DNA of 64,000 bases, from contig NC_083286.1 in the NCBI RefSeq assembly GCF_963506605.1, forward strand, positions 27,218,001 through 27,282,000, read 5' to 3'. How positions within the stretch are numbered: the stretch's first letter is position 1; each line of letters starts with the position of its first letter. Shown here piece after piece: positions 3,081 through 28,698 of the stretch. Origin of the DNA: Zootoca vivipara (taxonomy: Eukaryota). Below the pieces are notes generated by a model. That model ran no database searches. It saw only the letters and a list, made by a program, of their open reading frames with translations, and was not told where the DNA came from. The position numbers and the translations under genes were made by a program.

Positions 3081-4493
3081 ACACAATAGTAACTCTTCAT
3101 TCTACCAGTGCCACTTTGTACTTTAATTGCCCTGCCATTTAAATTATTTTTTGTTTTCCCTGGTTTCCATATACTGTACTTTCTTCAGACACTGTGCACT
3201 TCTGCTATACAACACCTATCCCAATATGTTGAAAATGGCTATGTCTCAGCAACAAGATTACCCCTCTTCTTCCATTCCAAGGAGTTGCAAATATAATGGC
3301 ACTAAAGAGGGTGGGTATCAAAATTATAACCTGCTTTTTGGAAAAGGTCCAAAGAGTGTGGTCCACATCCAAACAGGGAATAGATTCCTGTTTACAATAT
3401 ACTGTATGTTACATTTTTAGAGTCAACTCCAAAATAACCAACCGTTCAGTCACTCAAAAGATGTTCCTCGATGCATGCCATCTCAAAACATTTAGGAATT
3501 TCTAAAGAACCATAGTCTTCAACCATGGCACCCATGTTTAAATTTTAAACTGCATGTGTCTGCCTTTCTTCCCCTTTCTTTCATTCTACTGACATCACCT
3601 TGTTCCTATTAAATGCATACACAAACACTCCAAAAATGATGGTGGTGTGCTTTTGGTGCAGCCTAAGTGTGGTTGGGAAGCCATGATTTTTTTTATAGAA
3701 TATCTGTAAATGAAGATGTTGCATACAAGGAATGAGGGTAGGGAGGGAGATCTCTTTAAGTGAAATGAATGAAATTTACTAACAGAACCGTAAGTTGAAC
3801 CAATATAATTTACCCAAGGTCTTATGAAAAAGTTATAAATACGATTCCTGATAACTGACCCTATCATTAACTCCAGAAACACTATTAAGAGCCAAATTGG
3901 TATATGGTCAACTTATTACAAAAATAAATAACAGAACATGCACACTTTTCAAAACTTTATAATCATGCAACTGTCAATCAAATTCAAAGCTGAAAACCTC
4001 ATAGAAAATTAGTTGGTTAAACTGCTTTACTGTTCTATTAGTTCCAGCTAAATGTCTGCATGAAAAAACAGTTTTTCAACCCTCCAAGATGTGTTTCTTC
4101 TCTGAAACACAACTTCCATATCAGAACAGCAGGTGATAGTCCTCTTTCTTTTGATCTTTTCACGTTTCTTTAAGGAATGAACTTATTCAAATGGCAGTAA
4201 TTTACAGAAGATAGTATTTTCAGTTCTCTTTTTCTATTAAGCTATACTGTATTCTAATAACCTTATACTGGTTTAGAAGTTGACCAAACTAAGGCAGCAA
4301 TCCTAACTCCACTTACCTGGGAGTAAGCCCCACTGAATTCAATAGGACTTACTTCAGGGGACAAGATTAGGATTGCACTGAAAAGCTACAATATTAGCAT
4401 AATTACAAGGAAGTAAACCCCTTGGAACTCAATGAGACCTCTGAGTAAATACATTTAAGATGGCTCTGTTAACTTCATATTACAGTATCTTAC

Positions 4494-4939
4494 CCAGAGA
4501 GGACAGTCATGTACCACCAATCTGACATTTCCAAACACACAGGCTTGATATTCGGTGAATGCAGGATTTCTAACATAGTTGGCAGAGTTTAACAACAAGC
4601 TGCTGTCAGTCTCTGAAACCAGAGCACTTCTCCCAAGATAGGTCCAAATCAGACTCCTCTGCTGATCATCCTCGGAAAAGCCACCTCTTTCATTTCCAAA
4701 AGCTACAACGTGAACGGACCTACAAATAAACAATGTTTTTAATCTGCTGGTATCAAACATCTATTATGACGAAATGAAGAGAATGTGGGAAGGGGAGAAG
4801 AGGGGGGGGAAGCAAATGATGTTTTTCAAGTGACAAGAAGAATCATTATTATTTTCTCAAGGCACACGGTTTTTTTGTGTTTTTGTTTTTGCCAGAGACA
4901 GGAAACACTCAAGGAATAAATAACACAACCCACGTACAT
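4494..4939 (-). CDS. RHOBTB3: Rho-related BTB domain-containing protein 3, 5' part. Exon 1 codes only 'AT' (4938-4939); exon 2 is 4494-4719. The gene continues left of the window.
   Basis: Exon 2 (226 nt, tttgtag|G TCC ... TGG|gtaaga) encodes SVHVVAFGNERGGFSEDDQQRSLIWTYLGRSALVSETDSSLLLNSANYVRNPAFTEYQACVFGNVRLVVHDCPLW. This closely matches the recalled RHOBTB3 N-terminus (MSIHIVALGNE...FTEYQASAFGNVKLVVHDCPVW). The upstream gatcAT|gtacgt supplies a split ATG (this exon-1 assignment is inferred). Confidence 0.92.
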
Positions 4940-5039
4940 GATCTTAAATCCAAAAGCAGGAGAGCAAGGTGACTATGGATCCTGCAAAAGCTGCTTGCAT
5001 TATAAATCCAAAGCCTCTTGGGTTTATTCTTTCTCCATT

Positions 5040-7189: not shown

Positions 7190-7479
7190 TGTGAAATACA
7201 ACCCTATATATAGAAATGAGCAAACCAATGATATTTTAGGGAGAAGGCTAGCAGGCGGGGCCCATTACTTACATCATAGGAGCCTACACAACACAAAACA
7301 CTGTTGCTGTATGTAGGTTTTATTTGTTTTTTATATTATATTTTGGAAATGTACATCCAGTGTTCTTTTTCCAATAATTTTGGGGGGGGGGCTCAAGAGA
7401 GTGGGGCCCTAATCTAGCTTATACTTAAATCCGGCACTGCATGGTAAAACGGGTGACGTAGGAACAGTCATACACCGAC

Positions 7480-8110
7480 CAAGGTGGAATAAAATATGAG
7501 GCGGGGGAGAAGCTCCACCCACCCCCGGCCAGAAGAAGAAGAGGAAGAAAAGAGCACGAGACGAGGGGGCCATGAGGGGAGACTCAAAGAACAAGGCCGC
7601 CTCAGCGCTCGCCCGCGCCGCCTCTGCAGAAGCGCAACGGCCTCTCGCGCTCCCTCGCGTTGCCCTGGTTACTGCCCGAGCGGGCACCCCGCTTCCCCAC
7701 CCGCCGCGGCCGTTTGCCGCCATTCTAAGAAGCGCGTGCCGGCGAGGATCGGTTTGGCGCCCGCTCTGCTCCTCCGCCCGCTCCCCCTCCCCTCCTTCTC
7801 AACGTGACATGCACCGAGCGAGGCCCCGGTGGGGCGCCGCGGCCCTGTGGAGCAGCGCGGCCAGGAGCCGCCGCTACTGGAAGACCGTGGGGCAGCTGGA
7901 AGGCATCGTGTCGGAGCAGGACACGGACCATCACTTCGTGCACCGGAGCACCATTCCTACCATGCACTTCCAGCCCAGCTTGCCCAGGTTCCCCCGCGTC
8001 GCCGTTGCTCCAGACTTGCAGGGAGTGGGGAGGGTGTGTGAGGTAGAAAGCGGAGCCGAGGAGGAGGAAGAAGAAGACGAAGAAGCGGGAAGGCGAGCAG
8101 GCCCCTCGTG
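7480..8110 (+). promoter_or_regulatory. CpG island covering the promoter and exon 1 of the CPT2-like gene
   Basis: Very GC- and CpG-rich stretch in an otherwise AT-rich region; overlaps the first coding exon. Confidence 0.75.
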
Positions 8111-8238
8111 CCTTCTTCCTCCTTCTGCTCTCCCAAAAAGCCACTCGTTCCAGTTCCCAAGGGGGGGGGGTTAATATACAGGTGAAACTCGGAAAATTAG
8201 AATATCTTCAAAAAGTGCATTTATTTCAGTAATGCAAC

Positions 8239-8277
<39 letters not shown>

Positions 8278-11200
8278 TATTTTTACAAATGCTTTCTTTC
8301 GGAAATTCTACAGTAATAAAACAAATAGTTACAATAATACAAAAATAAACATAAACATCGCTATTACATTTCATTAATTGCATTCCATTTATAATTGACC
8401 TGCCTAAGGACAAATAATTACAATTGCAACAAATAAAGGCTTGACATATCTTCCTTTGCAGGTCATGCATCTATCTCATATATTGGTTTCACCTTTTAAG
8501 TTGCGTTACTGAAATAAATACACTTTTTGATGATATTCTAATTTTCCGAGTTTCACCTGTATGCACAGTAATTTGCACTTAAGAGCAAACGCAACAAAGC
8601 AACCCAAATGAAAGCTGGCCCGCTTGCTGGGCAGAGTGCTTGAGGTTGATCCTACTTGAGTGAGTTCCTCATTCCACCCTGAAGGGCAAAATATAAGTAA
8701 GATTTCTTTGACCACGTTGCACTTTTGCATTGTGAGTCGTCTCAGGACCACTTTTAAAAGCTGTCACCTTAAATAATAATGTAGTTACCATCTGCAGAAG
8801 CTTATGCTGTGCAGTATATTGGGTTGTAATCCTATGGCCACTTATTTTAGGGTAAGTTGGTTGAGCTTTGTGGAAGTAAATTTTCCGGTAAACAGATAGG
8901 ATCACGCTCTTAGGCGCCAAGGCACCACAATACTTTTTGTGCATGCCAGCTTAACACTAGGATCCATTGTGGGTACACCAGGCAGAGATGAAGCACTGAT
9001 AAGGGGCATTAGCAAAGCCCAGAGCTTTCCAAGCTTTTCATGTTGGTGACACGCTTTTTAGGCGTGCATCATTTTTTGACACTGTAATTCAGTTTTATTA
9101 GCAAACCGGAGGTCAAACTAGCCTCTTTCCATCTCCTGGAGGACTGCAGGGAGCATTCGCACGACACACAAACTGCAGCAGCCGATGCGCTCATGCATGT
9201 CCTGGGCAGAAGAAGGACCTGAGAAGGATTCCTTCATTGATTTTTTAATAAATAATATTTATTGACATTGTGTGCACATCTGTCCACCTAACATTTGTTC
9301 TATTAAAACTAATTTCATATTAGTTTACTTGCTAAACCTAAACATTAAGACTAATTACGCCTTAATATGTCTAGTTTACTGGAGTAGTTGCACCCTGTTC
9401 AATGGCTGCTCACAATCCGTAAATGGATGTAGTGCACATGTGGAAAGTGTGCAGCATTTAATAACTCTTTAACCATCCTGATTATGCTGCAGGATTGTAG
9501 GAAGCATTAAGCTGCTTGAAATAAGATGTTTTTTTGTAGGAGACAAGTGTTTCAGCGCTTCTGATCCTCACAGGACAAAATTTTGTTGTGTATCTGTGCA
9601 TGTGTCTGTGAGCATGGGGATAGCTCATACTGGTCCTCACCTGCTGACATTGCAGATATAAATCAGTATGAGTGAGGCACTGCTGGTTTGCTACTGTAGG
9701 GGGTCCCAGATATGTGAATGATTTTGCTTCCTCTGATTTTCATTGTGCATTATATCCTTTAAGTCTTAGAAGGCATAAAAATTAAGTGTGAATGTATCAG
9801 TGTGGAAACAGAACTAGTAATCTTTCCACTCTTACTGTTTTTAACATTTGTAGAGAAGAGGCTCGGGTGTCTTCATCATTTAAATTGTCTTTAATTTTTT
9901 AAAATAATACTTGTGGCAAGTAAGAATCACCTCTGGGTGATCAGGCAACAAAGGCTTTGCAAATTAAAAGAGTATTCTCCCCCACTCCAGGTAATCTATA
10001 AATTACGTGTCTATGTGCCATAAATTATTAATTTAAATATGAATGAACAGGTGGGCTGGTACATTGAAGGGGAGGTAGTAATCTCTGAGGATTTATGTGC
10101 CGGATCTATAATTTGTCAATATCCATTTGTAGATTGCCTATTCCAAAACTGGAGGATACTATTAATAGATATTTAGCTGCCCAGAAGCCACTATTGAATG
10201 AAGAAGAGTACAGGTACAAGAAATGACACTTGCAATTATTACAATATGTCAGATGTAAACACAAAAATTAACATTTGCTCTCCAGCTCTACCACCAGCAG
10301 CTGCTTAAACATCTACTCTCTTGTATGGCTCTGTATGTGTTTTCTATTGGTGCTCCATGCCAATAGGAAGAGCTGTTGTATGCTTGGCATACTGATTGTC
10401 CCAGGTTCAATCTTCAGCATCTTGTCTGAAACCCTGCAGAGATGCTACTAGTTAGTGTAGAAATAAGACAAAGGCTGTGTACACACTAACCCATTTGTAT
10501 CACAAAAACGTAACCTTTCTTGATCAAGAATTGTTAATGCCTGTCCTCAACATGCTGCTTTCAGTCTTGATGCGCTGCTTATCTCCCGCTTGGACTACTG
10601 CGATGCCTCTACGTGGGGCTAGCTTTGAAGGTGACTCGGAAACTGCAATTTGTAATCCAGAATGCGGCAGCTAGAATGGTGATTGGGAGTAGCTGCTGAG
10701 ACCACATGACCCTGTCCTGAAAAAGCTACATTGGCTCCCAGTACATTTCCGAGCACAATTCAAAGGGCTGGTGCTGACCTTTAAAGCCCTAAACGGCCTC
10801 AGCCCTGTATACTGCCCTTCTGGCGGTCCTCACACTGCGAGAAGTGAGGTTACAGGGAACCAGGCAGAGGGCCTTCTCAGTTGTGGCGCCACCCACCAGA
10901 TGTTAAGGAGATGAGTAATTACTGTATATAACATTTAGGAAACATCTGAAGGCAGCTATGTATAGGGAAGCTTTTTCAGGTTTAATGTTTTATTGTGTTT
11001 TATATATATGCTGGAAGCCGCCTAGAGTGGCTGGGGCAACCCAGTTAGATGGGCAGGTTACAAATTAATAATAATAATGATAATATTGATTCTAGATCCA
11101 GCCAGCCACAAGGTTTGGTGTGATTACTTAGTACCCATTTGAAAACCCATGCCTTGTTTAGCTTATCCATGACTTTTCCTCCCTGCGCATGTCCCAGGTG

Positions 11201-13903
11201 AATGAAGAAGGAAGTGGTGATTGTGATCTTGATATAGGCCCACCCACAAAAATATTGAGCAGTTGTTGATACACACACACATTGCCAGGACCGCCTACAT
11301 CTTGTTTTTGTCTTTTTTCAAATGGACACATTGTGGGGTAATGCAGAATCAATCTGCAATGAGCTTTTATTTTCAAAATGGAACCAATTTCTCAAGAAGC
11401 ACTTTTCAGGGGGCCCCAAAATAAAAAAATATTAAATAGATCTAGATTGTGTGTGGAATATGTAGGGGGGAAAACAATAACTACACAGTCTCCAGTGGTT
11501 CTTCACTAAACTGTTGTGTATACACAGCCTGAGCCAACTGGACGTATTCTCTGACTCAATGTAAAATAGCTTCTTATATTTACTGGTAACTCCTTCCCAG
11601 AACAAATGTATGGTGCCGCTTCCCGCTCCTCAGAAACCACAATTTCTGTGAAACCTTTGACTTAAAAGCACAGTTTTCATCCCTAGCTGAAGGAAAACAA
11701 TCTAAGATGCAATCCTTTGCACACTTACTTGGGACATGTATGTTGATGGTGCTGTTTCACTAATAATTAGGGGTCCAGCCCTTGTTTTTGGTTGGCAGTG
11801 CACTTCCTCTCCCCCTTCCCCCAAATTCTTTGGTGTGTTCAGATTATGCAAGGGAGTTTCCTGCTCAGCTTTGGAGAATCAGAAGTGGCACAGGACACTA
11901 GGGAAGGACTTCTGCTTCTTCTGCCTTCTTTTGCTGAAGGAACTAGGGAGAGGGGTTCTGGTGTCACTTCATACTGGGTTTGAGAGGTGGCAGAAACAGC
12001 CCAAGTCATTTTGCTGCTTCTGCTTCTCTAAAACCTAGCTGTTAAGGCCCCTGATAAGAGAGACCAGTCCCACCTCAGGTTCTTTCCACATGCACTGTGG
12101 AAGACTCTTCTGAGTTCTATGGAATTTGTAGACACCATAGGGGACCTGGAATTTGTGTTGAATAATCCAGGTCAATGATTCATGCAGCAAGATCAGGAAG
12201 ATTTGTCAAAGCAAACTCTCTTTATGGACTCCTAAACAGAATTCATATAAACATTTACTCCCTCAAAAACTCCAAGCCTGGAATTACAACAATTTCTATT
12301 TACAATATTAGTTAGCCTTGATTTTGATTAAGGAGCACACCTAACCTGACTCTTTTCAGAGTCATATTTACTTCATCCATTAATTTCCTGTGATGTTTAT
12401 TTAATGTGTGATTTGTTGAAACACTGCTCCTGCACAACCCACATTAATGTCAAGGTGTGTAAGGATGGCACTATATATTGTATATATGTATTACATAAAA
12501 GGGAACCATATTAACTAAATATTAAAATTTATTATAATAAATGCTGTTAAAATCCAGTGCTAAGATGAGTTACACTTTTTCAATTTCTAGAAATACTGAA
12601 AAAATTGCTAGAAAGTTTGAAGCTGGAGAAGGGAGGTTACTACATCGTGATCTTCTGGAACATGATAGACTTAATAAGCATACAAGTTATATAGCAGGTT
12701 GGTTTTTAATTTTCTTGCAATTAAAAAAAATACCCATGAACTTTCTTACTATTATTGATGTTTATTCCAGAGATAGTTTAGGAATTATTTTTCACCATCC
12801 ATGCTCTCTCATTATGTGCTGATTGTTTTTCCCACCAGATTATATATTTGTGATGAAGTAGTCATTTAAGAATTCCACTTCATGTGGAGACTGCAGTTGA
12901 ATGCTGTATCCCAAAACCTAAAAAGTTGATTGCACAATGGCTAGTTCACTCATGATATCTAGGTGAATAACAGAATTGTCACATGATCACTTTTCATTTT
13001 CAAATTGCAGACAAAACATAATCCAAGCAGAAAAAGCACTCAAAATGGTCAGCTGAATAATCTCTGTGCCTCTGCTGAAACTTTCTGTCTGGTAGACTAT
13101 TTACACATTATTCTGTATCTTTTAGTCCTCAGAAGCATGACCAGTCTTCACTTCTATTACTCTCTACAAAAAAATATTAATTATTATCTTCAGTGTTTTT
13201 CAAAGTTCTTAAATCACTGGTTTTGTTTCAAGTTTTGGAACAGTCAAGTCTGTGTGTTGCATATTCCCCAGATAATATCCTTATTTAGTATTCATTAGCT
13301 TAATGAATGCACATATTCTGTTAGTATTAGGTGAATAAATATTGACCAATATAAGAAGAGCTTATTGGATCAGACCAAAAGCCGGTATAGTTGAGCACTC
13401 TTTTGCTGTTGACTAAGTAAATCTCTATGGGAATCCCATAAGCAGGACATAAGCACTATAGCACTCTCCCACTTATGATTCCCAGCAACTAGCATTTAGA
13501 GGCATACTTCCTCTGATATTGGAGGTAATATATAGCCATCATTGATAGGTTTATCCTCCATAAATTCATCTAATCCCCCTGTAGAGCTGATTAAGTTGTC
13601 AGCCATCACTACATTACATGGTAACAAAATTCCATAGTTTACCAATACCCTGCATGAAATACGTTATTTCTGTTTCTCTGTCCTGAATCTCCCTAAAATT
13701 CAGCTTCAACTGATTACTCTGGGGTATTGAATTTTTCAACAGCACACATACTTTTGTACATGTCTATTATTTCCCTTATGCCTGCTTTTTTTCTAAGCAA
13801 AAAAAAAAACATAAACAAAAATCTTCTGCCTAGGGAAGTTGCTCCAGCCCCTTGATCATTTTGTGAATTGCACATATTCCAGCTCTCTAATATCCTTTTT
13901 GAG

Positions 13904-13938
<35 letters not shown>

Positions 13939-16900
13939 ACCAAAATTGTTCTTATTTGGGTAAGATTTCGACTTTCTTAAGGTAGACTTTTTTCTTTAAT
14001 GGCACACGTGACTGTGATTGTTATCCACACTGGTGACCTCTTGGATTTGGTTGTACAACTATCTTTGATATATCAAAGAGCCAAATGTGCATTTTTTTAA
14101 CTGGATTGTTTTTGTTTTTATAGGTCCCTGGTTTGATATGTATCTTTCTGCAAGAGATCCAGTTGTTTTAAACTACAACCCTTTCATTACTTTAAATCCT
14201 GATCCAAAACCAGAATACAACAAGCAAATAGTGAGAGCAACAAATCTGGTTGTATCATCGTTAAAATTTCTTAACAGCCTGAAGAATAACTATTTGCGGC
14301 CAGATATATATTATGTCAATCGCAAATGGGGTCAGAGTAAAGTATTCAAACATTTTATCCGTATTCTTCCACCTAGTATATCCTGGTATGGAGCGTATTT
14401 GGTGAATGCATATCCTTTAGACATGTCACAATATAAGTCACTCTTCAACAGCACTAGAATTCCTAATTTAAGTAAAGATGTATTGTTCACAAGTGAATTT
14501 GCAAGACATTTGTTGGTGATGAGAAATGGACATCTCTATGTTTTTGAAGTATTGGATGCTTTTGGTAACATTCTACACCCATCTGAAATCCTGGCTCATT
14601 TAACACAAATAATACATGATGCCGATCGTTTGCCTCCGTTTGAACTTTGCTACCTGACAACTGAAGATAGAAATACCTGGGCAACACTAAGACAGGAACT
14701 TGTTCAAAAAGGTAACGAAGAAAACCTCAAGAAACTTGACAGTGCTGTATTTTGTCTTTGCTTAGATAGAGCTTCCCCCAAAAATGAAGTTGAACTCACT
14801 CATTGTTTTCTTCATGGATATGGTTTCAATCGCTGGTTTGACAAATCTTTTAGTCTGATTGTCACTAGTGATGGTACCGCAGGAATAAATTTTGAACACT
14901 CTTGGGGAGATGGAATTGCAATTCTGCGTTTTGTTAATGAAGTCTATAGAGACAGCACAGAGCACCCGGCTCTTGTACCACAAGCCAGTCCAGCTCTATT
15001 TGTTACATCATGTGACAAGCTTGAATTTAATATGGATCACACAATAAAATCTGCTATAAGTGCTGCACTTCAGAAATTTGATAAAAAAAGGGGAATGCTC
15101 TGTGTTAGAACACTTAAGTATAAAAAGTTTGGAAAACAATATTTAATAAATCAAAATTTGAGCCCTGATGCTGTGTTTCAGCTTGCATGTCAGATGGCTG
15201 TCTATCACCAGTATGGAAAACTTCTTCCTTCTTACGAAGCATGTAGTACTGCAGCTTTTAAGCACGGTCGCACTGAAACAATTCGACCAACATCTGTGTA
15301 CACAAAAAAATGTACAGCTGCATTTATTGATCAACGAGGGAAGCATAGCGCTGAAGAAATAAGAAACATGATTGATGAATGTTCGAAGTATCATAAACGC
15401 TTGCAGCTGGAAGCTACATTAGGTTAGGCCTTTTCAACATTTTCTCATACTATTGGGTTTCTGTTGTTTGACTTGTCTTACAGAAAGGGTAATGTTTCCT
15501 AGGAGTTTTCACATGGAGATACATTCATTCTGGCTTTTCTTCATTTAACTAAAGACCTTGCTGAGAGATACAGAATGCAGTAATATTTTTCATACTTTAT
15601 TTCATTTATATATCCATCCCCCTTCCTCTGAGGAGCTCAAGGCATTATCTGTCATTCTCCAATGCCCATTTTATCCTCACAACAACCCTGTGAGGTAAGT
15701 TAGGCTGACAGATTGACAGCACAATCCTATCCATGTCTGCTCAAGATTAAATAAAATAAATACTCTATGAAACAGGAATGTTCTAAAATTCGGCATACTG
15801 TATTTCTTAACAGTCATAGACATTCAGATGCCATGCTAAATAGTGTCTTAGGATGGCATTTATGTGCCTACCTTCCTTCCAGGTTTACATGCTTTCCCCT
15901 CCTATTTCCTCCTGTAGCCTGGAGGACCTTAGAAGCCTTAAATTTGCCTTTTTGCATCTAAACCACAGACCATAGTTTACCATTAAATGTACCAACTTGA
16001 AAACATATGGTAGATTATGAAGCTGGTTTGTTGAGACTAATTAGTGCTAAACCACACAATGAAAAGTTGTATCTAAGAGAAAACAATGAACGCTTTTAAA
16101 TTCCTCCGCTCAGTTGTGGGAGAATTACAGAACTGTAGAGTTGAAAGGGACCCTGAGGGTTATTTAGTCCAACCCCCTGCAATGAAGGACTATGCAGCTG
16201 TCCCATACGGGGATCATACCTGCAACCTTGGCTTTATCAGCACCACGCTCTTAACCAACTGAAAGGAGATATAGACAGAAGATCAGGAGGAAGGTAGGCA
16301 CATGCAGGTCATGCTAAACCAAATGTGGCCATACACCCCCTAGTAAGATGAAATATGGTTATGCTTAGTGGGGAGACATTTCAGTGTATCGTTGGGGATA
16401 CTCATGGGTGTCTAGCTGTCTGGCATCATTAGACAAAGTTGCAGGTCATTCCAGGATAACAGGAAAATATAAAAATTAGGAACGGCATCAAGTCAATGAT
16501 AGAAGAAGCCGCTTAAAGCTATTTAAAAGCTATCACTTAATGGAGGTGTTTTCACAAAACAATGCATAAATAGTGTTTTCTATTTCATATAACTAGAATG
16601 GAAAAGTTTATTTACTAAGTATATAATCAGAATGTTCTAGCTCACTTTCTGTACATTAGGTTGTATCCAGAGCAGACCTAATGAAATTAGTGAACTTAGC
16701 TAACTTTCCTTTTCACCTGAGCTTTTGGTCATTCATGTGTGGGTTTCAAGTATTTGTGGCCTCTTTTAGTAGGCAGGATCTGTAAGCCCTGTTGTTGTTT
16801 TAATACTTACTCTATGTATTTGCCCTTTTTTTAAATCCAGGCCAAGGATTTGATCGCCATTTATTTGCCTTGAAGTACCTCGTCCAGCGCAGAGGTGGAC

Positions 16901-17169
16901 GTATGCCTGATATTTATAATGACCCAGCCTACAAAAACATAAACCATGTTATAATTTCAACTAGTACATTAGGCAGTGAAGCAATTAATCATGGTGCGTT
17001 TGGACCAGTTGTGCCAGATGGTTTCGGAGTTGGATATAACATGTTTGATGATTGGGTAGGAAGTATTACAACTAGCTATTTAGAAAAAGACTTAGAAGAA
17101 CTTATGAGATACATCGAATATACATTGAATGATATATATGATGTCTTAGAAGGAAGAAGACTTAAATAG
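7809..17169 (+). CDS. Carnitine O-palmitoyltransferase 2-like (CPT2 paralog), 664 aa. Exons: 7809-7987, 10133-10213, 12591-12697, 14124-15422, 16841-17169.
   Basis: Five GT-AG exons (179/81/107/1299/329 nt) join in frame with no internal stop. Motifs: Arg-rich N-terminal presequence, [35 protein letters not shown]2-specific insert ...[26 protein letters not shown], catalytic [53 protein letters not shown] at 17266. Confidence 0.95.
8179..8559. mobile_element. Tc1/mariner-type MITE with ~60-bp TIRs and TA flanks, interrupted centrally by (TTA)n and an AT-rich retroelement-like 3' end
   Basis: Left caggtgaaactcggaaaattagaatatc...gcaactt is the reverse complement of right aagttgc...gatattctaattttccgagtttcacctg; TA on both sides. 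Confidence 0.8.
10535..11085 (+). mobile_element. L2 LINE 3' fragment
   Basis: Degenerate [34 protein letters not shown] coding remnants, followed by a 3' UTR and (AAT)n tail. Confidence 0.75.
13352..13885 (-). mobile_element. CR1-like LINE 3' fragment (degenerate)
   Basis: ataagaagagc..ggatcagaccaa... resembles the reverse-complemented squamate CR1 3' end; a similar decayed piece lies at ~53260-53600. Confidence 0.5.
13906..13937. repeat. (GT)n microsatellite
   Basis: Direct reading. Confidence 0.95.
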
Positions 17170-19926
17170 TATCAAATTTTCTATTATATGGAGCTAGCAA
17201 AATAATGATGCAAAATTAAATACAGTATTTAAATATTGTACAGAGGACTGAAATGCAACAGAGAAAATAAACACTCTAGAAAGCAAAAATTTCAGACAAA
17301 GGTTAAAGTAGTTCTATGTCAATGTCAGTATACTAATATTGTAATTTCTTGTTCTTACTGTATATTATTGTTACTACTATTAATGATTTTATAGTAAACA
17401 TTTTTTATGCAATATTTTTTCATTGATTTTATTCACTGCTGCTCATCTAGGGAAATCATATTATGCTGAAGAGTATATCAATTTTGTAATCCCAAACACT
17501 GCAAAACCAAGCAGTATATATGCTGGTGTTTATATGTGTCACCCAGTCAGCCAGCTCTCAAAATGCTTCCTTCCCTCCCATTCTCAAGTGGGAAACTATG
17601 TACTGTATATACATTTTAGCATGCAGAGTCTGCACTGCATGATATTATAATTTCAAGGAACTTTCCCTGTTTTATATGCATGCACATCAACATAGGAGCA
17701 AGGGGCAGATCTGAGTAGCTCTGCCCCTGATGTCCCCTGCTCCTTCACCCAGACTCTATAAGTCAGCATGACTATCTGAATGGAGGGGAAATGCGGGGAG
17801 GAGTCTTCTGGGGTCTTCTGGGGAGGAGTGATGGCAGACTATTTGATTGCTGACACTCATCGGCAGAGATAGTTATGTGGTGATTAAAGGTAATCAAGGT
17901 ATAAATCTTGGTTACCAAACTCCCTGAATGGAGGGAAACTTCACAAGTATGTGCAGGTTGTGTGTGTACAGTTTGTTATACCACATCCGTTAGAAAAGGA
18001 TATAAAAATCCTCCCACATTTCTCTCTCAGTAAACCTAATCCTATTATAACAGTCATAGTAATTTGCATGAATTCCCTTTTAAAAGAACTGGGACAGGAG
18101 TTTAGGGATGATTCCTGGAGAAGCATGGGTGGTGAGGAGGGGCTCCAACAGAAAACTAGTTGTAGCTGTTGATTAATCAAATCACTCTGTTAAGTCTTAT
18201 TACTCCTAGAGGATTCCATTTATACTTAATATTTCTTCACTAAAAGCCATGTTACTGACTTACAAAGAAGAAAGATAGCCAGTGCAAAAATGGAGTCAAA
18301 AAACACTTAAGTAAAAGCAATGTGGTGTCTGCGAGGCTCATTTTATAAAAAGTAGCTTTCAGTGAAATACGGTCACCCAGTACACGTGATAAAGCTTACA
18401 AATCCTAAAAGCTACTGAATAGTTTGCAGAGACAGAAAAGGAACACACACTAAAAGCAATTGATTAATCTGTTTACAGAGAAAACTAGCCAGTTTAAAGT
18501 GCACAGGTCACAAGTTAGAACCGTTAAGAAAGTAAACAATTAACGACATAACTTACTGAGCAGTCAAAATAAACAGACCAATACACAATGGGATATTTTC
18601 CTCCTTTGCATCAATGGAGATTTCTGCCAAACATGGAAAGCAATTGAAAAGAATATCCAGATTTCTGACATGAAATACAGTATGCATGTTTAGTTCTTTA
18701 AGTAATCCCACTGACATGCAGGCCAAGACCTAACCTAGATGTATACTTCGGATACTGGTGAAGTGTGGTGAATCCTGAATTTCATCCAGTAAGAAATTGA
18801 AAAGGGGTAGTAATCAATTGTTGGGGATAAATTGGGCTTTGTCAGAGACAGCAGCCACTGCAGAGATTCAGTATTGGACCCTCAGAGAAAGTTATATATA
18901 GTATGTAATTTTGGACTCAGTCTGGTACTACTTAGCCCCGCCCCATCCCGCCCCCGCCCCATATCAGGCTTTGAAATTAGTGTGAGAACATTTTAACCAG
19001 TGGATTTCTCTTGCAGCATTGATGGCATTCGTTTTAGCGGTTAACACACAGCAGCAGCCTCTGCATTCAGAATCTACTTAAGTTTCCAAACCATCGGGCA
19101 GCCCATGTATTGTAGTTCATCAAGAGGTGATGAGGGCATGCATGACTGTGGCAAGACCTTGTTTCTGTGGGACAGATTACCTGCATACAGTAATTCAGGA
19201 GTACCCAGTGTTGCTCAGACACAGACCACTTAGTCCAAAATTGGAGTTATGGGTATGATGTGAGGACCTTTTAAAGTAGCATCCTCACTACTGCCTCTTT
19301 CGTACTAGCTGGAACAGTTTCTCCCAGAGAAGTATTGGTTAGATACAACAGGGATGGGGAATCTCTAGTCCAGCGGCTGAATCTGGGTCCCTTGGTCTCT
19401 ACCCAGCAGTCAGAACTCTCCCCAGCCACACACCCTCTCCCTAGACTGCAGTCCTCACCAAGCCTGACCCTGTACCTTTTCCAGGTACATTTACCTGTTT
19501 GGAATGTGTCCTTGGGCTGTGATGTTGACACCTATTGCTTGCCTGCGTTACACAACCAACAGGTATGTTTAGGCATGGTCGAGCAGAGACTGCTAGGTGA
19601 ACAGAACTGGGTATCCTGCCCACATCCTTGGATGTAAATAATTGAAAACGAGCCAATAAAATCTGATTAGAGGACTTAGATGGCTCTGCTGTTGACGCGG
19701 AGATAATGGTGGTATCAAGGCTGGAACAAATGCAAGGGTTTTTATCTGCAGAAACTGCAAGGAGCTACAGAAGATTCCGGCCCTTGTAAAGAAAGGAGGG
19801 GGAGAATGTAAAAACTCTTTAATCATGTGGGAAAGCTGTTTAATATTGTTGTTACAGGAATTCTAAGGTCTCAAATATAGAATAAATGTTGATAATTGCA
19901 CAAGGTAAACACACATTTTAAAAAAA

Positions 19927-21391: not shown

Positions 21392-24300
21392 ATGTCTCTC
21401 AGGCCAATTGGCTGGATATGTGGAGAGCTGGTCAGGAAATTTGCTGGACAAGGTATGAGCTACTCTGTGTGTGAGTTCTCAAATCCTGGATTCAGAAAAC
21501 ACTGCCTTCTCTATACCTTTGTACTTGATTTTTTAAAAAAATCTGTTTCTACCAGATAGGCCAGGGGTAGGGAACCTCATTCCTGGGGGCCAAATATAGC
21601 CCCAATGCCTCTCTGGGCTGTGGAATTTTCCCCATGCCACACCCCTTCTGCACCAGCCATGGCCCTCGCTAGCCCTATTCCATACATACATGTTTTTGCC
21701 TAGCTAGAATGCCTTTGGTCCCACCTACCACTAGCACATGGTCCTTGAAACGTTGGCCATGTTGGTTTATGGCCCAATAGAATAGAATTTTGCTAATTTA
21801 GATCAGCCAGCAATTGGCTGGACAGCAAGCATAGTTCTTCGTTCTGATGCTGCAGACTTGCTCCAACCTAAATATTTCATGTTTGAACAATGCTTACACG
21901 ATAAGTATAATTTTGAGAACAGGGGCTTTATTATTTTTAACTACTGTTTTTCAATTCAGCCCAGATAATACAGAGAGTCTTCTTGGAAATTATAGATGAG
22001 ATTAGGGATGAATTCCCCAATTTACTGAGACTGACAAGCTCCAACCAGGTAATGTTTCTGAACTAATACTAATACTATTTCACTATTATTTGAAAGTTAA
22101 GTTTCTTTATACAATAGTCTGTTAAAGATTGCATTTATTGCAAACTCAGCAAAGTTTCAGCTAAATGTTTTACTTATACCACAAAGTTATACACAAAGTT
22201 AGAAAAATAATTAATATATTCAGGGGAGACAAGTTTTGGCATAGCATACCTCCAGAAACCTGCTCCACATATTTTTTTTCTTTTTAGTATCATTTTCATC
22301 CAATGATGATAAAAACAATGTTATTACTAAATCCCCAAAATAAGCACACCCATGTGTGCATCTATTGAGTTTTGGCTAATTTATCCAAGTAAGCAGGGTT
22401 AAACTGATGTTTCTAAAGCAGTCTAAAGATCTATGGCATACAATGTTCTTTAGTAAGGAGCCCAAGGGTAGTAATGCTACCGTAATTCCCCCCCCCCTTA
22501 CTGGTGTTTCTGTGAATAATTGTCTAAAATACATGTCAACTTGGTGCATTTGCTGGAATGTTGGACTAGGAAGGACCAGGGTTCAAATTCCCACTCAGCC
22601 ATGAAGTCCCTGGATGACAGCCCTGTCACTGTCTCTCAGCCTAACCTCCCCCACAAGGTTGTGGGGAGGGAGAGATCCATTTATGCCATCTTGAGCTCCT
22701 TGGATTAAAAGTGAGATATTAATATAATAAATGAATGAATGCCAGGGCAAAGATGCTTGCAGATCTCATCATATATTCATTGTCCCCCCAATGGCAAACT
22801 ATACTACATCAGCAATAGGGCCCAGTGTGGGAATGTTGAGGATAGTAGGAGATAATGTTGTTGTTGTTTAGTCGTTTAGTCGTGTCCGACTCTTCGTGAC
22901 CCCATGGACCACAGCACGCCAGGCACTCCTGTCTTGCACTGCCTCCCGCAGTTTGGTCAAACTCATGTTCGTAGCTTCGAGAACACTGTCCAACCATCTC
23001 GTCCTCTGTCGTCCCCTTCTCCTAGTGCCCTCCATCTTTCCCAACATCAGGGTCTTTTCCAAGGATTCTTCTCTTCTCATGAGGTGGCCAAAGTATTGGA
23101 GCCTCAGCTTCACGATCTGTCCTTCCAGGGAGCACTCAGGGCTGATTTCCTTAAGAATGGATAGGTTTGATCTTCTAGCAGTCCATGGGACTCTCAAGAG
23201 TCTCCTCCAGCACCATAATTCAAAGGCATCAATTCTTCGACGATCAGCCTTCTTTATGGTCCAGCTCTCACTTCCATACATCACTACTGGGAAAACCATA
23301 GCTTTAACTATACGGACCTTTGTCGGCAAAGTGATGTCTCTGCTTTTTAAGATGCTGTCTAGGTTTGTCATTGCTTTTCTCCCAAGAAGCAGGCGTCTTT
23401 TAATTTCGTGACTGCTGTCACCATCTGCAGTGATCAAGGAGCCCAAGAAAGTAAAATCTCTCACTGCCTCCATTTCTTCCCCTTCTATTTGCCAGGAGGT
23501 GATGGGACCAGTGGCCATGATCTTGGTTTTTTTGATGTTGAGCTTCAGACCATATTTTGCGCTCTCCTCTTTCACCCTCATTAAAAGGTTCTTTAATTCC
23601 TCCTCACTTTCTGCCATCAAGGTTGTGTCATCTGCATATCTGAGGTTGTTGATATTTCTTCCGGCAATCTTAATTCCGGCTTGGGATTCATCTAGTCCAG
23701 CCTTTCGCATGATGAATTCTGCATATAAGTTAAATAAGCAGGGAGACAATATACAACCTTGTCGTACTCCTTTCCCAATTTTGAACCACTCAGTTGTTCC
23801 ATATCCAGTTCTAACTGTAGCTTCTTGTCCCACATAGAGATTTCTCAGGAGACAGATGAGGTGATCAGGCACTCCCATTTCTTTAAGAACTTGCCATAGT
23901 TTGCTGTGGTCGACACAGTCAAAGGCTTTTGCATAGTCAATGAAGCAGAAGTAGACGTTTTTCTGGAACTCTCTAGCTTTCTCCATAATCCAGCGCATGT
24001 TTGCTATTTGGTCTCTGGTTCCTCTGCCCTTTCGAAATCCAGCTTGCACTTCTGGGAGTTCTCGGTCCACATACTGCCTAAGCCTGCCTTGTAGAATTTT
24101 AAGCATAACCTTGCTAGCGTGTGAAATGAGCGCAATTGTGCGGTAGTTGGAGCATTCTTTGGCACTGCCCTTCTTTGGAATTGGGATGTAGACTGATCTT
24201 CTCCAATCCTCTGGCCATTGCTGAGTTTTCCAAACTTGCTGGCATATTGGGTGTAGCACCTTAACAGCATCATCTTTTAAAATTTTAAATAGTTCAGCTG

Positions 24301-27300: not shown

Positions 27301-28698
27301 TCATTTTGGCTAGGTTCAAAAATTCAACTAATTTAACATGCCAATCTTGTATTGTTGGAACTTCTTCCCCCTTCCATTTCTCTCACAGAGTGTTTGTTGT
27401 GGGGCAGGAAGGGAAAGGAGATTGTTAGCCACTTTGAGACTCCTTAAGGGGAGTGAAAGGCGGGATATCAAGTCCAAACTCTTCTTCTTCTTCTCTACAG
27501 GATAAATCCATGTTCCTTTATGATGTCATTTCCTATCCAGCGAAGACCGCCCTCAGTGGTGTAATGTGCATTTCTTATGCAGCACTAATTTATTTGGTAG
27601 GTTAGTAAATACTGTTCTTTCTGGTCCTTCTTGTTTCGTGCTTCCCCTTCCCCTCAGCAAAGAATTGAAGCCATGCATTATTCTTCAATTACTGTGCACA
27701 CTTTTAGTGCACATTACCAATGCCCAGCTGTAGCTGGCTTGCTAGCTGTGACCTTTCCTCGACCAGCATTGCCTACCTACAGTAGCATATATACAGGTAA
27801 CCTGTAATTTAGGTTATTTGTATTGCACTCTGCAAAGGGCAGCTCTTCACGACAGTCCAGAAACTGCCACTGGCACTCAAGCAGGATCAAGTGTCACTCA
27901 TCCTTGAACCTCAAGAGGATGATCATCCAACTGCCAATATGCCAACATTTATTAATGTTCATGAGAAAAATGTGTTGACCATATGCAGTATTGATGGGAT
28001 GGTTCAAGGGGTAGGACAACACACACACATACACACAGCATTTTAGGCTGAAACCAGTCCGGAAATTTTCAAAGTGTGAATCTGCTCACCTCATCCCCAT
28101 CGCGATTCTATCCTTTCCTCCAGGCATTTGATATACAGTGGTACCTCGGAAGTCAAATGGAATCCATTCCGGAAGCCCTTTCGACTTCCAAAACGTTCGG
28201 AACCCAAGGCGCGGCTTCCAATTGGCTGTAGGAAGCTCCTGCAGCCAACTGGAAGCTGCGTTGGACGTTCGGGTTCCAAAGAACATTCGCAAACTGGAAC
28301 ACTCACTTCCGGGTTTCGACTCACAAGGCGTTCATGAACCAAGGTACCTAACCAAGTAGCCTACTCGCTATACTGCAAAACTCTCTCTCTTAAAGTTAGG
28401 CAGAAATGCAGAGGATTCCAAACCTTTCCGTTTCTTTATGCCAAAAAATGTACCTCTTATGTGTATACAGGCACTCTCCATTAATAAAGCACTGGGAAGA
28501 ATTAAAAGCATAATTGAAACAGACAAGAGCTCCAGGGAAAGCAGCAGTGATGATCTCGATGCAGATGGATTTCCCAGAGTCAGGGCAACGGCAAGCGACT
28601 CTGCAACTTCCTTCCCACACGAAGTATCTTCAGAGTTGATTAAGGAATCACCAAGCATCCATACACTACTTTTGAAAATAGATAATAAAAATGAATAA
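21392..28698 (+). CDS. SPATA9: Spermatogenesis-associated protein 9, 233 aa. Exons: 21392-21452, 21960-22048, 25601-25828, 27501-27596, 28471-28698.
   Basis: In-frame exons encode MSLRPIGWICGELVRKFAG / QRVFLEIIDEIRDEFPNLLRLTSSNQ / GLTHLSRSSKSIAKFVQPHLLRKLTDLQRVSHRLLQKLNAPKQPLYKLK / VISYPAKTALSGVMCISYAALIYL / ALSINKALGRIKSII. These match recalled SPATA9 blocks (PVGWICGQVLKNFSG, DEFKDEFPTILRL, SRSSKSVAK, FPAKTALTS..SYAALIYL). The gene is next to and opposite RFESD, as expected from synteny. Confidence 0.92.
22857..24554 (-). mobile_element. RTE-BovB LINE, 5'-truncated (1.7 kb), in SPATA9 intron 2
   Basis: Open 559-aa RT ORF (FIDYAKAFD, GVRQGCILSP, YADD); (CAA)n tail; 10-bp TSD aggagataat at 22847-22856 and 24554-24563. 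Confidence 0.97.
26674..27492 (+). mobile_element. tRNA-derived CORE-type SINE (Squam3-like, (CTT)n tail) split by a nested insertion
   Basis: Head cagcgtggagtagtggttaagagcg... (A box), CORE-like gggtgaccttgggctagtcac, and tail ...aagtccaaactcttcttcttc. Confidence 0.8.
26826..27381 (-). mobile_element. L1-like LINE 3' end nested in the SINE
   Basis: 17-bp TSD ctcacagagtgtttgtt (26809-26825 and 27382-27398). The minus strand encodes an ORF2-like C-terminus KWKGEEVPTIQDWHVKLVEFLNLAKMMATIRN...EWKYVEDYL, followed by an AT-rich 3' UTR and short A-tract. Confidence 0.8.
28136..28348. mobile_element. Tigger/pogo-like MITE (right TIR damaged) in SPATA9 intron 4
   Basis: Left end TA-cagtggtacctcgg; right end ccaaggtacc. 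Confidence 0.65.

What the first reader, a model, noticed from the sequence alone, without database searches (positions are those of the whole stretch)
7809..17169. Intact second CPT2 gene between RHOBTB3 and SPATA9: a candidate ancient paralog absent from mammals
Seen: a complete 664-aa carnitine acyltransferase with five exons and a CpG-island promoter. It has a mitochondrial-type presequence (MHRARPRW...RSRRY), the catalytic His (FEHSWGD), the STS motif, GFDRH and the CPT2-specific membrane-binding insert. Knowledge (recalled): mammalian CPT2 is single-copy at 1p32 near MAGOH/LRP8 with the same five-exon layout (81- and 107-nt exons 2 and 3, ~1.3-kb exon 4), and no such gene lies between RHOBTB3 and SPATA9 in human. 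Inference: retained introns exclude a retrocopy. The marked divergence (e.g. [17 protein letters not shown] versus recalled EPEVFHLNPAKSDTITF) and a location on the block paralogous to the LRP8 region (LRP8/VLDLR/LDLR paralogon) suggest a whole-genome-duplication ohnolog kept in reptiles. That would be an uncharacterised second inner-membrane enzyme of the carnitine shuttle.
Basis: partly seen in the sequence, partly recalled or inferred. Interest (0 to 1): 0.85.

Follow-up and report, generated by a model that had tools for sequence, protein, structure and literature searches.

The report
Ancient second CPT2 gene in lizard
This lizard window carries an intact second copy of CPT2, the enzyme that hands long-chain fatty acids to the mitochondrial matrix. 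The copy is older than the shark/bony-vertebrate split. It survives in sharks, one caecilian, reptiles, ratite-type birds, monotremes and marsupials but not in placental mammals, and no paper we could find describes it.

Summary
A five-exon, 664-codon gene lies at 7809-17169 (+), with GT/AG introns, a CpG island at its start and a poly(A) signal after the stop. All five exon translations are 100% identical to an auto-annotated protein, Zootoca vivipara XP_034955880.1 "CPT2, mitochondrial-like".

The same species also has a canonical CPT2, on another chromosome-sized contig, so this is not a relocated single copy.

A maximum-likelihood tree puts the gene in a "CPT2-like" (CPT2L) clade. Its members are sharks, a caecilian, monotremes, marsupials, palaeognath birds, crocodilians, turtles and squamates. 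This clade is sister to all canonical gnathostome CPT2. An AU test rejects an independent shark duplication (p = 1e-11).

"Absent from mammals" is therefore wrong. The gene is missing only from placentals, and also from neognath birds, frogs and ray-finned fishes.

All catalytic and substrate-site residues checked are kept, apart from S488A in most tetrapod copies. Divergence is concentrated in the region of the membrane-facing insert. Within lacertids CPT2L is nearly as conserved as CPT2.

Three things remain untested: a whole-genome-duplication origin, expression and enzymatic role.

The parts
7400..8200 (.). CpG island over the 5' end of CPT2L (presumed promoter and first exon)
   Evidence: GC 0.54-0.73 and CpG o/e 0.64-1.15 in 200-nt bins, against window background 0.37
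7809..7987 (+). Exon 1. The ATG at 7809 starts an Arg-rich presequence-like N-terminus, followed by the clade-specific YW(R/K)TVG...[10 protein letters not shown] motif
   Evidence: Sequence. The start Met is conserved across squamate, turtle, crocodile and mammal orthologues. 59/59 identical to P0413
10133..10213 (+). Exon 2, 81 nt (LPIPKLEDT...)
   Evidence: AG/GT borders. PF00755 positions 1-26. Same size as human CPT2 exon 2 (PMC10080702 Table 1)
12591..12697 (+). Exon 3, 107 nt
   Evidence: AG/GT borders. PF00755 positions 28-61. Same size as human CPT2 exon 3
14124..15422 (+). Exon 4, 1299 nt, 432 full codons. It holds most of the catalytic domain
   Evidence: PF00755 E 5e-119. Rat CPT2 2h4t E 2e-171. 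Human exon 4 is 1305 nt
14291..14407 (+). Region of the CPT2-specific membrane-facing insert (about rat 170-208), with the clade-specific signature PDIYYVN(R/P)KW
   Evidence: Translation. 11 of 15 amniote-CPT2L diagnostic sites fall in rat 137-195. Same-species CPT2L-versus-CPT2 identity is 0.33 in rat 176-200, against 0.56 overall
14897..14899 (+). Codon of the catalytic His (residue 381, equivalent to rat His372) in FEHSWGD
   Evidence: Invariant in 24/24 CPT2L and 27/27 CPT2 rows
15239..15241 (+). Ala495 codon (equivalent to rat Ser488, which from recall contacts the carnitine carboxylate). It is a tetrapod-CPT2L-specific Ser-to-Ala change
   Evidence: YEACS. Ala in 19/24 CPT2L rows. Ser in shark CPT2L, all CPT2 and all five invertebrate outgroups
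16841..17169 (+). Exon 5 coding part, with GFDRH, the STS motif at 16957-16965 and the TAG stop at 17167-17169
   Evidence: PF00755 positions 480-572
17266..17271 (+). AATAAA poly(A) signal about 100 nt after the stop (an ATTAAA also lies at 17215)
4455..4760 (-). Putative first coding exon of RHOBTB3, head-to-head with CPT2L. It has its own CpG patch at 5000-5400
   Evidence: ORF. The name rests only on recall of the human RHOBTB3 N-terminus. Pfam, Atlas and PDB gave nothing. CpG data
21968..27599 (+). SPATA9 exons found so far (21968-22048, 25661-25831, 27516-27599), downstream on the same strand
   Evidence: tblastn with the wallaby chimeric model P0031. Pfam PF15824 on each piece

Best explanation
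The locus is the Zootoca vivipara member of CPT2L. CPT2L is a paralogue of carnitine palmitoyltransferase 2 that arose after the tunicate split and before the last common ancestor of sharks and bony vertebrates.

The duplication copied the gene as DNA, with its introns, and the copy ended up on a different chromosome from CPT2. In amniotes it lies between RHOBTB3 and SPATA9.

It has since been lost repeatedly: in placentals, neognath birds, frogs, salamander, lungfish, coelacanth, ray-finned fishes and batoids. It is kept under purifying selection elsewhere.

Inferred mechanism (not shown):
- It is imported into mitochondria by its basic N-terminal presequence.
- It sits on the matrix face of the inner membrane through the CPT2-type insert.
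- It uses the His381/Asp385 pair and the STS motif to convert long-chain acylcarnitine plus CoA into acyl-CoA plus carnitine.
- It would thus be a second exit enzyme of the carnitine shuttle.

Its remodelled insert and the Ser-to-Ala change at the carnitine site suggest different membrane or translocase docking and different carnitine kinetics, probably in a restricted tissue.

Sub-claims and odds:
- Old pre-crown-gnathostome paralogue: 0.9.
- Origin in the vertebrate whole-genome duplications rather than a single-gene duplication: 0.65.
- Still a matrix-side long-chain carnitine acyltransferase: 0.6.
For: Identity:
- All five exon translations are 100% identical to P0413, Z. vivipara XP_034955880.1, 664 aa (name).
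- The same species has a canonical CPT2, P0428 XP_034977974.2. The two lie on contigs of 64.2 Mb (CPT2L) and 96.1 Mb (CPT2). They are 55% identical.

Phylogeny:
- The careful ML tree has 57 rows, model LG+C20+F+G4 and five invertebrate outgroups. CPT2L clade support is 100/99, canonical clade 98/93 and vertebrates 90/84. Each clade has its own chondrichthyans at the base.
- The AU test rejects a single chondrichthyan clade, which is what independent duplications would predict. Delta lnL is 62 and p = 1.4e-11.
- Discrete characters agree. D174 and L548 are shared by shark and tetrapod CPT2L against the outgroup state. G451, V195 and M155 are shared by all canonical CPT2 against an outgroup-like state in CPT2L.

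Gene structure:
- Exon sizes and phases match human CPT2, 81 / 107 / 1299 nt against 81 / 107 / 1305 nt. This excludes retroposition.
- CPT2L and CPT2 lie on different chromosome-sized contigs in every species where both contig lengths were given.

Synteny:
- SPATA9 lies downstream here.
- Chimeric CPT2L-SPATA9 gene models with both Pfam domains exist in Alligator sinensis, tammar wallaby and Podarcis lilfordi.

Constraint:
- The ORF is intact in more than 60 listed species.
- Lacertid pairwise identity is 95-97% for CPT2L against 97-98% for CPT2. Podarcis-gecko identity is 80% against 83%.

Function:
- Y120, H372, D376, Y486, R498, T499, R554, S588-T589-S590, G600 and F602 (rat numbering; roles from recall) are invariant in CPT2L wherever the site is present in the row.
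- The AF2 model of the Podarcis orthologue has pLDDT 84.6. It superposes on rat CPT2 2h4t with TM 0.90/0.96 and rmsd 1.9 A.
- The first 39 residues are disordered in that model. In the Zootoca protein the first 30 are basic with no acidic residue.
Against:
- The Logan proteins of this clade are unspliced exon-4 ORFs.
- No codon-level dN/dS could be computed, because no orthologous DNA could be fetched.
- With the shark CPT2L rows removed, a duplication inside bony vertebrates is only marginally rejected. Delta lnL is 7.2 and p-AU 0.047. The long CPT2L stem could be pulled towards the long outgroup branches.
- No cyclostome sequence and no shark synteny were available.
- Paralogy of the two chromosome regions is recalled, not tested.
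- Ser488Ala and the rebuilt insert leave room for a changed or weakened activity.
Confidence: 0.85

Rival explanations
1. The gene is an old paralogue, but it arose by a single-gene or segmental duplication in the gnathostome stem lineage, not by the 1R/2R whole-genome duplications.
For: The tree fixes only the interval, after the tunicate split and before crown gnathostomes.
Against: The two copies are on different chromosomes in all species checked. From recall, not tested: human 1p32-p31, where CPT2 lies, shares several paralogue families with 5q/9p (chicken Z), where RHOBTB3-SPATA9 lies. Examples are LRP8/VLDLR, JAK1/JAK2, NFIA/NFIB, PDE4B/PDE4D, PLPP3/PLPP1 and MAST2/MAST4.
Confidence: 0.25
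2. This is the genome's only CPT2, simply moved to a new place and evolving fast.
For: None after testing.
Against: Z. vivipara has a separate canonical CPT2, P0428, 667 aa, on another contig. The window gene falls outside the canonical clade, which has 98/93 support.
Confidence: 0.01
3. It is a recent duplicate specific to lizards or reptiles.
For: None after testing.
Against: Orthologues with the same SPATA9 neighbour occur in a crocodilian and a marsupial. The clade includes monotremes, a caecilian and sharks. It is only 55% identical to the same species' CPT2.
Confidence: 0.01
4. The gene is intact and conserved but no longer does the CPT2 job. It may have a new substrate range, a new partner or a non-shuttle role, possibly germline-specific and co-transcribed with SPATA9.
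For: Tetrapod CPT2L changed Ser488 to Ala and fixed a new signature across the insert region, at R161K, K164N, T165S, F176Y, H177Y and T185S. The stem branches are about twice as long as in CPT2. Gene models in three species join it to the gene named spermatogenesis-associated protein 9 (SPATA9).
Against: Every catalytic, CoA-side and acyl-tunnel marker residue examined is kept, including G600, which from recall permits long chains. The fold is CPT2-like at TM 0.96. The chimeric models may be annotation artefacts.
Confidence: 0.3
5. It is a decaying, unexpressed relic that merely looks intact.
For: No expression evidence could be obtained here.
Against: The frame, splice sites and catalytic residues are intact in dozens of lineages that separated up to about 450 million years ago. 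Amino-acid divergence within lacertids is close to that of CPT2. The gene keeps its own CpG island.
Confidence: 0.03

Closest known systems
Canonical CPT2 (carnitine O-palmitoyltransferase 2; rat structures 2H4T, 2DEB, 2FW3)
   Same: Same Pfam family and the same five-exon layout. Same fold (TM 0.96, rmsd 1.9 A). The insert that other carnitine acyltransferases lack is present. The catalytic His/Asp, STS motif, carnitine and acyl-tunnel marker residues are kept. The N-terminus is basic.
   Different: It is only about 55% identical to the same species' CPT2. It forms a separate clade, lies on a different chromosome and has different neighbours. The insert region is remodelled, and Ser488 is Ala in most tetrapod copies. 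About 16 extra conserved residues (YWRTVG...[10 protein letters not shown]) follow the presequence. Deep branches are about twice as long.
CRAT / CROT / ChAT (short- and medium-chain carnitine and choline acyltransferases)
   Same: Same superfamily fold and the same catalytic His mechanism (TM 0.87-0.89).
   Different: Much more distant, E about 1e-39 to 1e-31 against 1e-171 for CPT2, and 24-27% identity. CRAT, CROT and ChAT lack the CPT2 insert (from recall).
Lineage-variable CPT1 paralogues (Cpt1a1/a2/b/c; Lopes-Marques et al. 2015, PMC4589379)
   Same: They are a precedent that carnitine-shuttle genes have vertebrate paralogues retained in some lineages and lost in others.
   Different: That work treats CPT2 as one protein and does not examine its gene repertoire. 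CPT1 enzymes are outer-membrane, malonyl-CoA-regulated proteins.

Membership tests
Carnitine/choline acyltransferase superfamily (Pfam PF00755) | Full-length match to the family profile | tested here: met
   E2-E5 cover profile positions 1-572 of 574 collinearly. E4 alone scores E 5e-119.
Carnitine/choline acyltransferase superfamily (Pfam PF00755) | Catalytic His in the EHxxxDG motif, and the S-T-S motif | tested here: met
   FEHSWGD at 14891-14911 and STS at 16957-16965. Both are invariant across the clade.
CPT2 subfamily (as opposed to CRAT, CROT, ChAT, CPT1) | Closest in sequence and fold to CPT2 | tested here: met
   Rat CPT2 E 2e-171 against CRAT 1e-39. TM 0.96 against 0.87-0.89.
CPT2 subfamily (as opposed to CRAT, CROT, ChAT, CPT1) | CPT2-specific insert (about rat 179-208, range from recall) proposed to mediate membrane association | tested here: met
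   The segment is present without gaps and aligns to rat CPT2. Its sequence is strongly diverged. Membrane binding itself was not tested.
CPT2 subfamily (as opposed to CRAT, CROT, ChAT, CPT1) | Five-exon gene with 81- and 107-nt exons 2 and 3 and a roughly 1.3-kb exon 4 | tested here: met
   81 / 107 / 1299 nt here, against 81 / 107 / 1305 nt in human (PMC10080702 Table 1).
CPT2 subfamily (as opposed to CRAT, CROT, ChAT, CPT1) | Cleavable mitochondrial presequence and matrix-side location | tested here: inconclusive
   Only composition was examined. The first 30 residues are basic with no acidic residue, and residues 1-39 are disordered in the orthologue's model. No targeting predictor or experiment was available.
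CPT2 subfamily (as opposed to CRAT, CROT, ChAT, CPT1) | Long-chain acylcarnitine:CoA acyltransferase activity | not testable with these tools
   Needs a recombinant enzyme assay.
Canonical CPT2 orthologue group | Groups inside the clade of canonical vertebrate CPT2 | tested here: not met
   It falls in the sister clade, which has 100/99 support. The canonical clade excludes it with 98/93 support.
Canonical CPT2 orthologue group | Single CPT2-type gene in the genome, at the canonical locus | tested here: not met
   Z. vivipara has a separate CPT2 on another contig. This copy sits next to SPATA9.
Vertebrate 1R/2R ohnologue pair | Duplication node after the split from invertebrate chordates and before crown gnathostomes | tested here: met
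   Support drops to p = 0.047 when the shark CPT2L rows are removed.
Vertebrate 1R/2R ohnologue pair | Both copies lie in paralogous chromosome blocks (paralogon) | not testable with these tools
The claim rests on recalled gene-family maps only.
Vertebrate 1R/2R ohnologue pair | Placement relative to cyclostome copies | not tested
   No lamprey or hagfish CPT2 sequence appeared among the listed hits.

The most novel reading that the evidence does not exclude
CPT2L is a tissue-restricted second exit enzyme of the carnitine shuttle, possibly germline or testis, transcribed together with its neighbour SPATA9. Its rebuilt membrane/translocase-facing insert and altered carnitine site (Ser488Ala) would give it different docking and kinetics from CPT2. 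Non-placental vertebrates would then run two parallel matrix-side acylcarnitine-to-acyl-CoA routes, a layer of fatty-acid-oxidation control that placentals, neognath birds, frogs and teleosts each gave up.
Probability: 0.2. Interest if true: 0.75.

Novelty: new member of a known kind. Interest (0 to 1): 0.58.

Why it matters
CPT2 is treated as a single-copy enzyme without substitute. [quoted passage not shown]

A conserved second CPT2-type gene in sharks, reptiles, palaeognath birds, monotremes and marsupials has three consequences:
- Comparative work on lipid metabolism in these animals may be attributing two enzymes to one. Relevant topics include reptile fasting, hibernation and marsupial physiology.
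- Expression tables that list "CPT2-like" need re-reading.
- The repeated losses give a natural experiment on what a second shuttle exit is good for.

It is also a clean case of a lost ohnologue candidate of a human disease gene.

Tried and rejected
So there was no orthologous DNA, no codon-level dN/dS and no direct look at neighbours in shark, caecilian, marsupial or bird.

No read-level expression evidence exists in this report.

3. The look-up of sequencing runs listed no holder on record as RNA. Small runs guessed to be RNA hold 29-78% of the exon-4 words. They could equally be capture or DNA libraries, so I do not use them.

4. The Logan proteins of 427-429 aa looked like possible transcripts. 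They are exon-4-only ORFs that stop at the donor site, which means unspliced DNA.

5. P0123 is named SPATA9 in Alligator mississippiensis, and I first took it for a CPT2L member. The tree shows it is a canonical CPT2, so I dropped it as synteny evidence.

6. The RHOBTB3 name for ORF 4455-4760 could not be confirmed by Pfam, the Atlas or PDB.

7. The rat CPT2 structure paper (PMC2937350) and the review (PMC11115844) are not held. Residue roles and the insert range are therefore from recall.

8. The paper search for a 1p32 versus 5q/9p paralogon gave nothing usable.

9. The search of earlier findings had no note on CPT2 in this genome.

10. The spliced protein was never joined from the exons. 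Searches were done exon by exon by reference. P0413 and P0001 are database proteins returned by the tools. P0413 is identical to all five exon translations. They served as the full-length stand-ins.


Full report
**1. What is in the sequence**

The + strand between 7809 and 17169 holds five exons with canonical AG/GT borders:
- E1 7809-7987
- E2 10133-10213
- E3 12591-12697
- E4 14124-15422
- E5 16841-17169

They add up to 1995 nt, which is 664 codons and a TAG. Translated exon by exon in frame, E2 to E5 match Pfam PF00755 collinearly over profile positions 1-572 of 574. E4 alone matches rat CPT2 structures at E 2e-171, against 1e-39 for carnitine acetyltransferase.

- FEHSWGD at 14891-14911
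- STS at 16957-16965
- GFDRH at the start of E5
- [17 protein letters not shown] in the insert region

The 5' end lies in a CpG island at 7400-8200, with CpG observed/expected up to 1.15 against 0.37 for the window. An AATAAA lies about 100 nt after the stop.

**2. Whose gene it is**

All five exon translations are 100% identical to P0413. P0413 is Zootoca vivipara XP_034955880.1, "carnitine O-palmitoyltransferase 2, mitochondrial-like", 664 aa (name). So the window is common-lizard DNA, and NCBI's pipeline already predicts exactly this model.

Searches used the exons by reference. Two database proteins served as full-length stand-ins: P0413 and its Podarcis orthologue P0001, which is 95% identical.

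**3. Surroundings**

Downstream on the same strand lie SPATA9 exons at 21968-22048, 25661-25831 and 27516-27599 (tblastn; Pfam PF15824).

Upstream, on the minus strand, ORF 4455-4760 reads like the first coding exon of RHOBTB3 as I recall the human protein. It has its own CpG patch at 5000-5400. No tool confirmed that name.

**4. Not the only CPT2**

The cluster of canonical lacertid CPT2 proteins contains Z. vivipara XP_034977974.2 (P0428, 667 aa). It sits on a 96.1-Mb contig, whereas the window's gene sits on a 64.2-Mb contig. The two Zootoca proteins are 55% identical.

The same two-gene state, on contigs of different length, is recorded for many other species:
- the lacertids Podarcis muralis, P. 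lilfordi, P. raffonei and Lacerta agilis
- the other squamates Paroedura, Hemicordylus, Elgaria and Ahaetulla
- the marsupial Gracilinanus
- the caecilian Rhinatrema
- the sharks Heptranchias and Heterodontus

**5. Phylogeny**

I built a careful maximum-likelihood tree of 57 rows. It held the window's E4, 23 CPT2-like proteins, 27 canonical CPT2 proteins, one unnamed Logan protein, and outgroups from a tunicate, a starfish, an amphipod, a wasp and a nematode. The model was LG+C20+F+G4.

The tree gives two vertebrate clades:
- CPT2L, support 100/99. It contains sharks, then the caecilian Rhinatrema, then (monotreme + marsupials) and (palaeognaths, crocodile, turtles, squamates).
- Canonical CPT2, support 98/93, with its own sharks and rays at the base.

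Three further checks bear on the timing:
- Forcing all chondrichthyan rows together, as independent duplications would predict, costs 62 log-likelihood units, p-AU 1.4e-11.
- Discrete characters agree. D174 and L548 unite shark and tetrapod CPT2L against the outgroup state. G451, V195 and M155 unite all canonical CPT2, while CPT2L keeps an outgroup-like residue.
- As a check against long-branch attraction, I removed the shark CPT2L rows. Tetrapod CPT2L still falls outside a canonical clade that includes sharks (SH-aLRT 89). However, a duplication confined to bony vertebrates is then only marginally rejected, delta lnL 7.2 and p = 0.047.

So the pre-crown-gnathostome date leans on the shark genes. 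No cyclostome sequence was available.

**6. Distribution**

Three database searches were run, with E4, a shark CPT2L and the platypus CPT2L as queries. Three cluster look-ups were also run.

They list CPT2L in:
- four sharks (Cetorhinus, Carcharodon, Heptranchias, Heterodontus)
- Rhinatrema
- platypus and echidna
- at least ten marsupials
- ostrich, emu, cassowary, kiwi and tinamous
- crocodile, gharial and Chinese alligator
- many turtles
- geckos, skinks, cordylids, lacertids, anguids, an amphisbaenian, iguanians, Varanus and many snakes

No CPT2L-type hit came from placentals, neognath birds, frogs, a salamander, lungfish, coelacanth, ray-finned fishes or batoids, although their canonical CPT2 proteins fill the same lists. 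A CPT2L member would have ranked above them.

"Absent from mammals" is therefore wrong. The loss is placental. Absence here means absence from annotated protein sets, not proof of absence from genomes.

**7. Conserved position**

Gene models that join CPT2L exons to SPATA9 exons, carrying both Pfam domains, exist in Alligator sinensis (P0366), tammar wallaby (P0031) and Podarcis lilfordi (P0414, P0415). The Hemicordylus CPT2L protein is filed as a SPATA9 isoform.

Whether these are real read-through transcripts or merged predictions, they show the same adjacency and strand in a crocodilian, a marsupial and lizards. That points to the ancestral amniote position.

Ostrich and emu each carry the protein on two large contigs. 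This would fit a Z/W-shared region, but I did not test that.

**8. Mode of duplication**

Intron positions, phases and exon sizes match human CPT2, 81 / 107 / 1305 nt (PMC10080702 Table 1). The copy was therefore made as DNA, not through an mRNA.

Human 1p32-p31 and the 5q/9p block (chicken Z) share the LRP8/VLDLR, JAK1/JAK2, NFIA/NFIB, PDE4B/PDE4D, PLPP3/PLPP1 and MAST2/MAST4 families. Nothing here tests it.

I put the whole-genome-duplication origin at about 0.65 and a stem-gnathostome single-gene duplication at about 0.25.

**9. Constraint**

Codon-level dN/dS could not be computed, because no orthologous DNA could be fetched.

At protein level CPT2L is almost as conserved as CPT2 over recent time:

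| Comparison | CPT2L | CPT2 |
|---|---|---|
| Zootoca-Podarcis | 95.3% | 97.1% |
| Podarcis-Lacerta | 97.4% | 97.3% |
| Zootoca-Elgaria | 83.7% | 85.9% |
| Podarcis-gecko | 80.1% | 82.7% |

The extra divergence lies on deep branches. Root-to-tip path lengths are about twice those of CPT2.

An intact frame, intact splice sites and intact catalytic residues across lineages that separated up to about 450 million years ago are not compatible with neutral decay.

**10. What the protein looks like**

These residues are invariant in CPT2L wherever the site is present in the row: Tyr120, His372, Asp376, Tyr486, Arg498, Thr499, Arg554, Ser588-Thr589-Ser590, Gly600 and Phe602. The numbering is rat, and the roles are from my recall of the CrAT and CPT2 structure papers, which were not held.

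An AlphaFold2 model of the Podarcis orthologue, built from a 34-sequence alignment, has mean pLDDT 84.6. It superposes on rat CPT2 with TM 0.90/0.96 and rmsd 1.9 A over 623 columns.

Three differences stand out:
- Ser488 is Ala in 19 of 24 CPT2L rows. It is Ser in shark CPT2L, all CPT2 and all outgroups. From recall, this residue contacts the carnitine carboxylate.
- Eleven of 15 sites that are fixed-different between amniote CPT2L and all CPT2 lie in rat 137-195. The 176-200 window has only 0.33 same-species identity, against 0.56 overall. This is the CPT2-specific insert, which the literature links to membrane association (PMC8125234).
- After a basic, acid-free N-terminus, amniote CPT2L carries a conserved stretch that CPT2 lacks: YWRTVG...[10 protein letters not shown] in sauropsids and YWRS...DHH(F/Y)VHRS in mammals.

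There is no C-terminal SKL-type signal. The protein ends in ...EGRRLK.

**11. Most likely working**

Shown here:
- It is an intact, conserved, CPT2-fold carnitine acyltransferase gene with its own CpG-island 5' end.
- It is paralogous to CPT2 since before crown gnathostomes.

Inferred:
- It is imported into mitochondria.
- It binds the matrix face of the inner membrane.
- It catalyses acylcarnitine + CoA -> acyl-CoA + carnitine through His381.
- Its membrane or translocase docking and its carnitine affinity differ from CPT2.
- It may act in a restricted tissue.

Expression is the weakest link. No run that holds the exon is on record as RNA. The Logan proteins of this clade are unspliced exon-4 ORFs. 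I sent nothing from 15664-15702 to any search tool afterwards.

**12. Novelty**

Full-text searches found no paper on a vertebrate CPT2 paralogue. The search terms were CPT2-like, paralog(ue), duplication, ohnolog, "two CPT2 genes" and carnitine acyltransferase gene-family evolution. The one gene-family study found deals with CPT1 only and presents CPT2 as one protein (PMC4589379).

The sequences themselves are in public annotation under "CPT2, mitochondrial-like", or are misfiled as CPT2 or as SPATA9. I therefore file this as a new member of a known kind: an undescribed paralogous subfamily of a well-known enzyme, and not a new mechanism.

**13. Verdict**

- Right: it is an ancient paralogue.
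- Wrong: "absent from mammals".
- Open: the whole-genome-duplication origin, expression and function.

Interest is moderate to high, 0.58. A specialist in fatty-acid oxidation would be surprised that marsupials, monotremes, reptiles and sharks carry a second CPT2. But lineage-specific loss of old paralogues is common, and no functional difference has yet been shown.

Noticed in passing
window 30883-33915 (+) and 22868-24547 (-): There is an intact 1010-aa LINE ORF with endonuclease and reverse-transcriptase domains. A 5'-truncated, inverted near-copy (559-aa RT ORF) sits inside a SPATA9 intron.
   Followed up: partly
window 20282-20686 (-): A 134-aa ORF with a GIY-YIG nuclease domain (Pfam E 6e-06) lies between CPT2L and SPATA9. 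It is probably a Penelope-like element relic.
   Followed up: partly
window 45524-46873 (+): A single-exon, very GC-rich (0.60-0.70) 449-aa rhodopsin-family GPCR ORF (Pfam 7tm_1, E 1e-23). By recalled human gene order it could be GPR150. The name was not tested.
   Followed up: partly
window 7572-7808 (+): An in-frame ATG lies 79 codons upstream of the conserved start, inside the CpG island. Podarcis lilfordi gene models (P0410, P0414, P0415) carry a comparable N-terminal extension. The conserved Met of all other orthologues corresponds to 7809.
   Followed up: partly
P0366 (Alligator sinensis), P0031 (tammar wallaby), P0414/P0415 (Podarcis lilfordi): Public gene models fuse CPT2L exons to SPATA9 exons, with both Pfam domains in one protein. 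Some CPT2L proteins are filed under the name SPATA9. These are either real read-through transcripts or merged predictions.
   Followed up: partly
window 5000-5400: A second, smaller CpG-rich patch (CpG o/e 0.77-0.94) lies just upstream of the putative RHOBTB3 first coding exon. The two head-to-head genes therefore seem to have separate CpG islands about 2.3 kb apart, not one shared bidirectional island.
   Followed up: no
window 8238-8277: An (ATT)n microsatellite of about 13 units lies in intron 1, just after the CpG island.
   Followed up: no
P0351/P0352 (ostrich, emu): The CPT2L protein is recorded on two large contigs (about 86-90 Mb) in each ratite. This would fit a gene in the shared part of the Z and W chromosomes.
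   Followed up: no
The tool says its filter also trips by chance.
   Followed up: no
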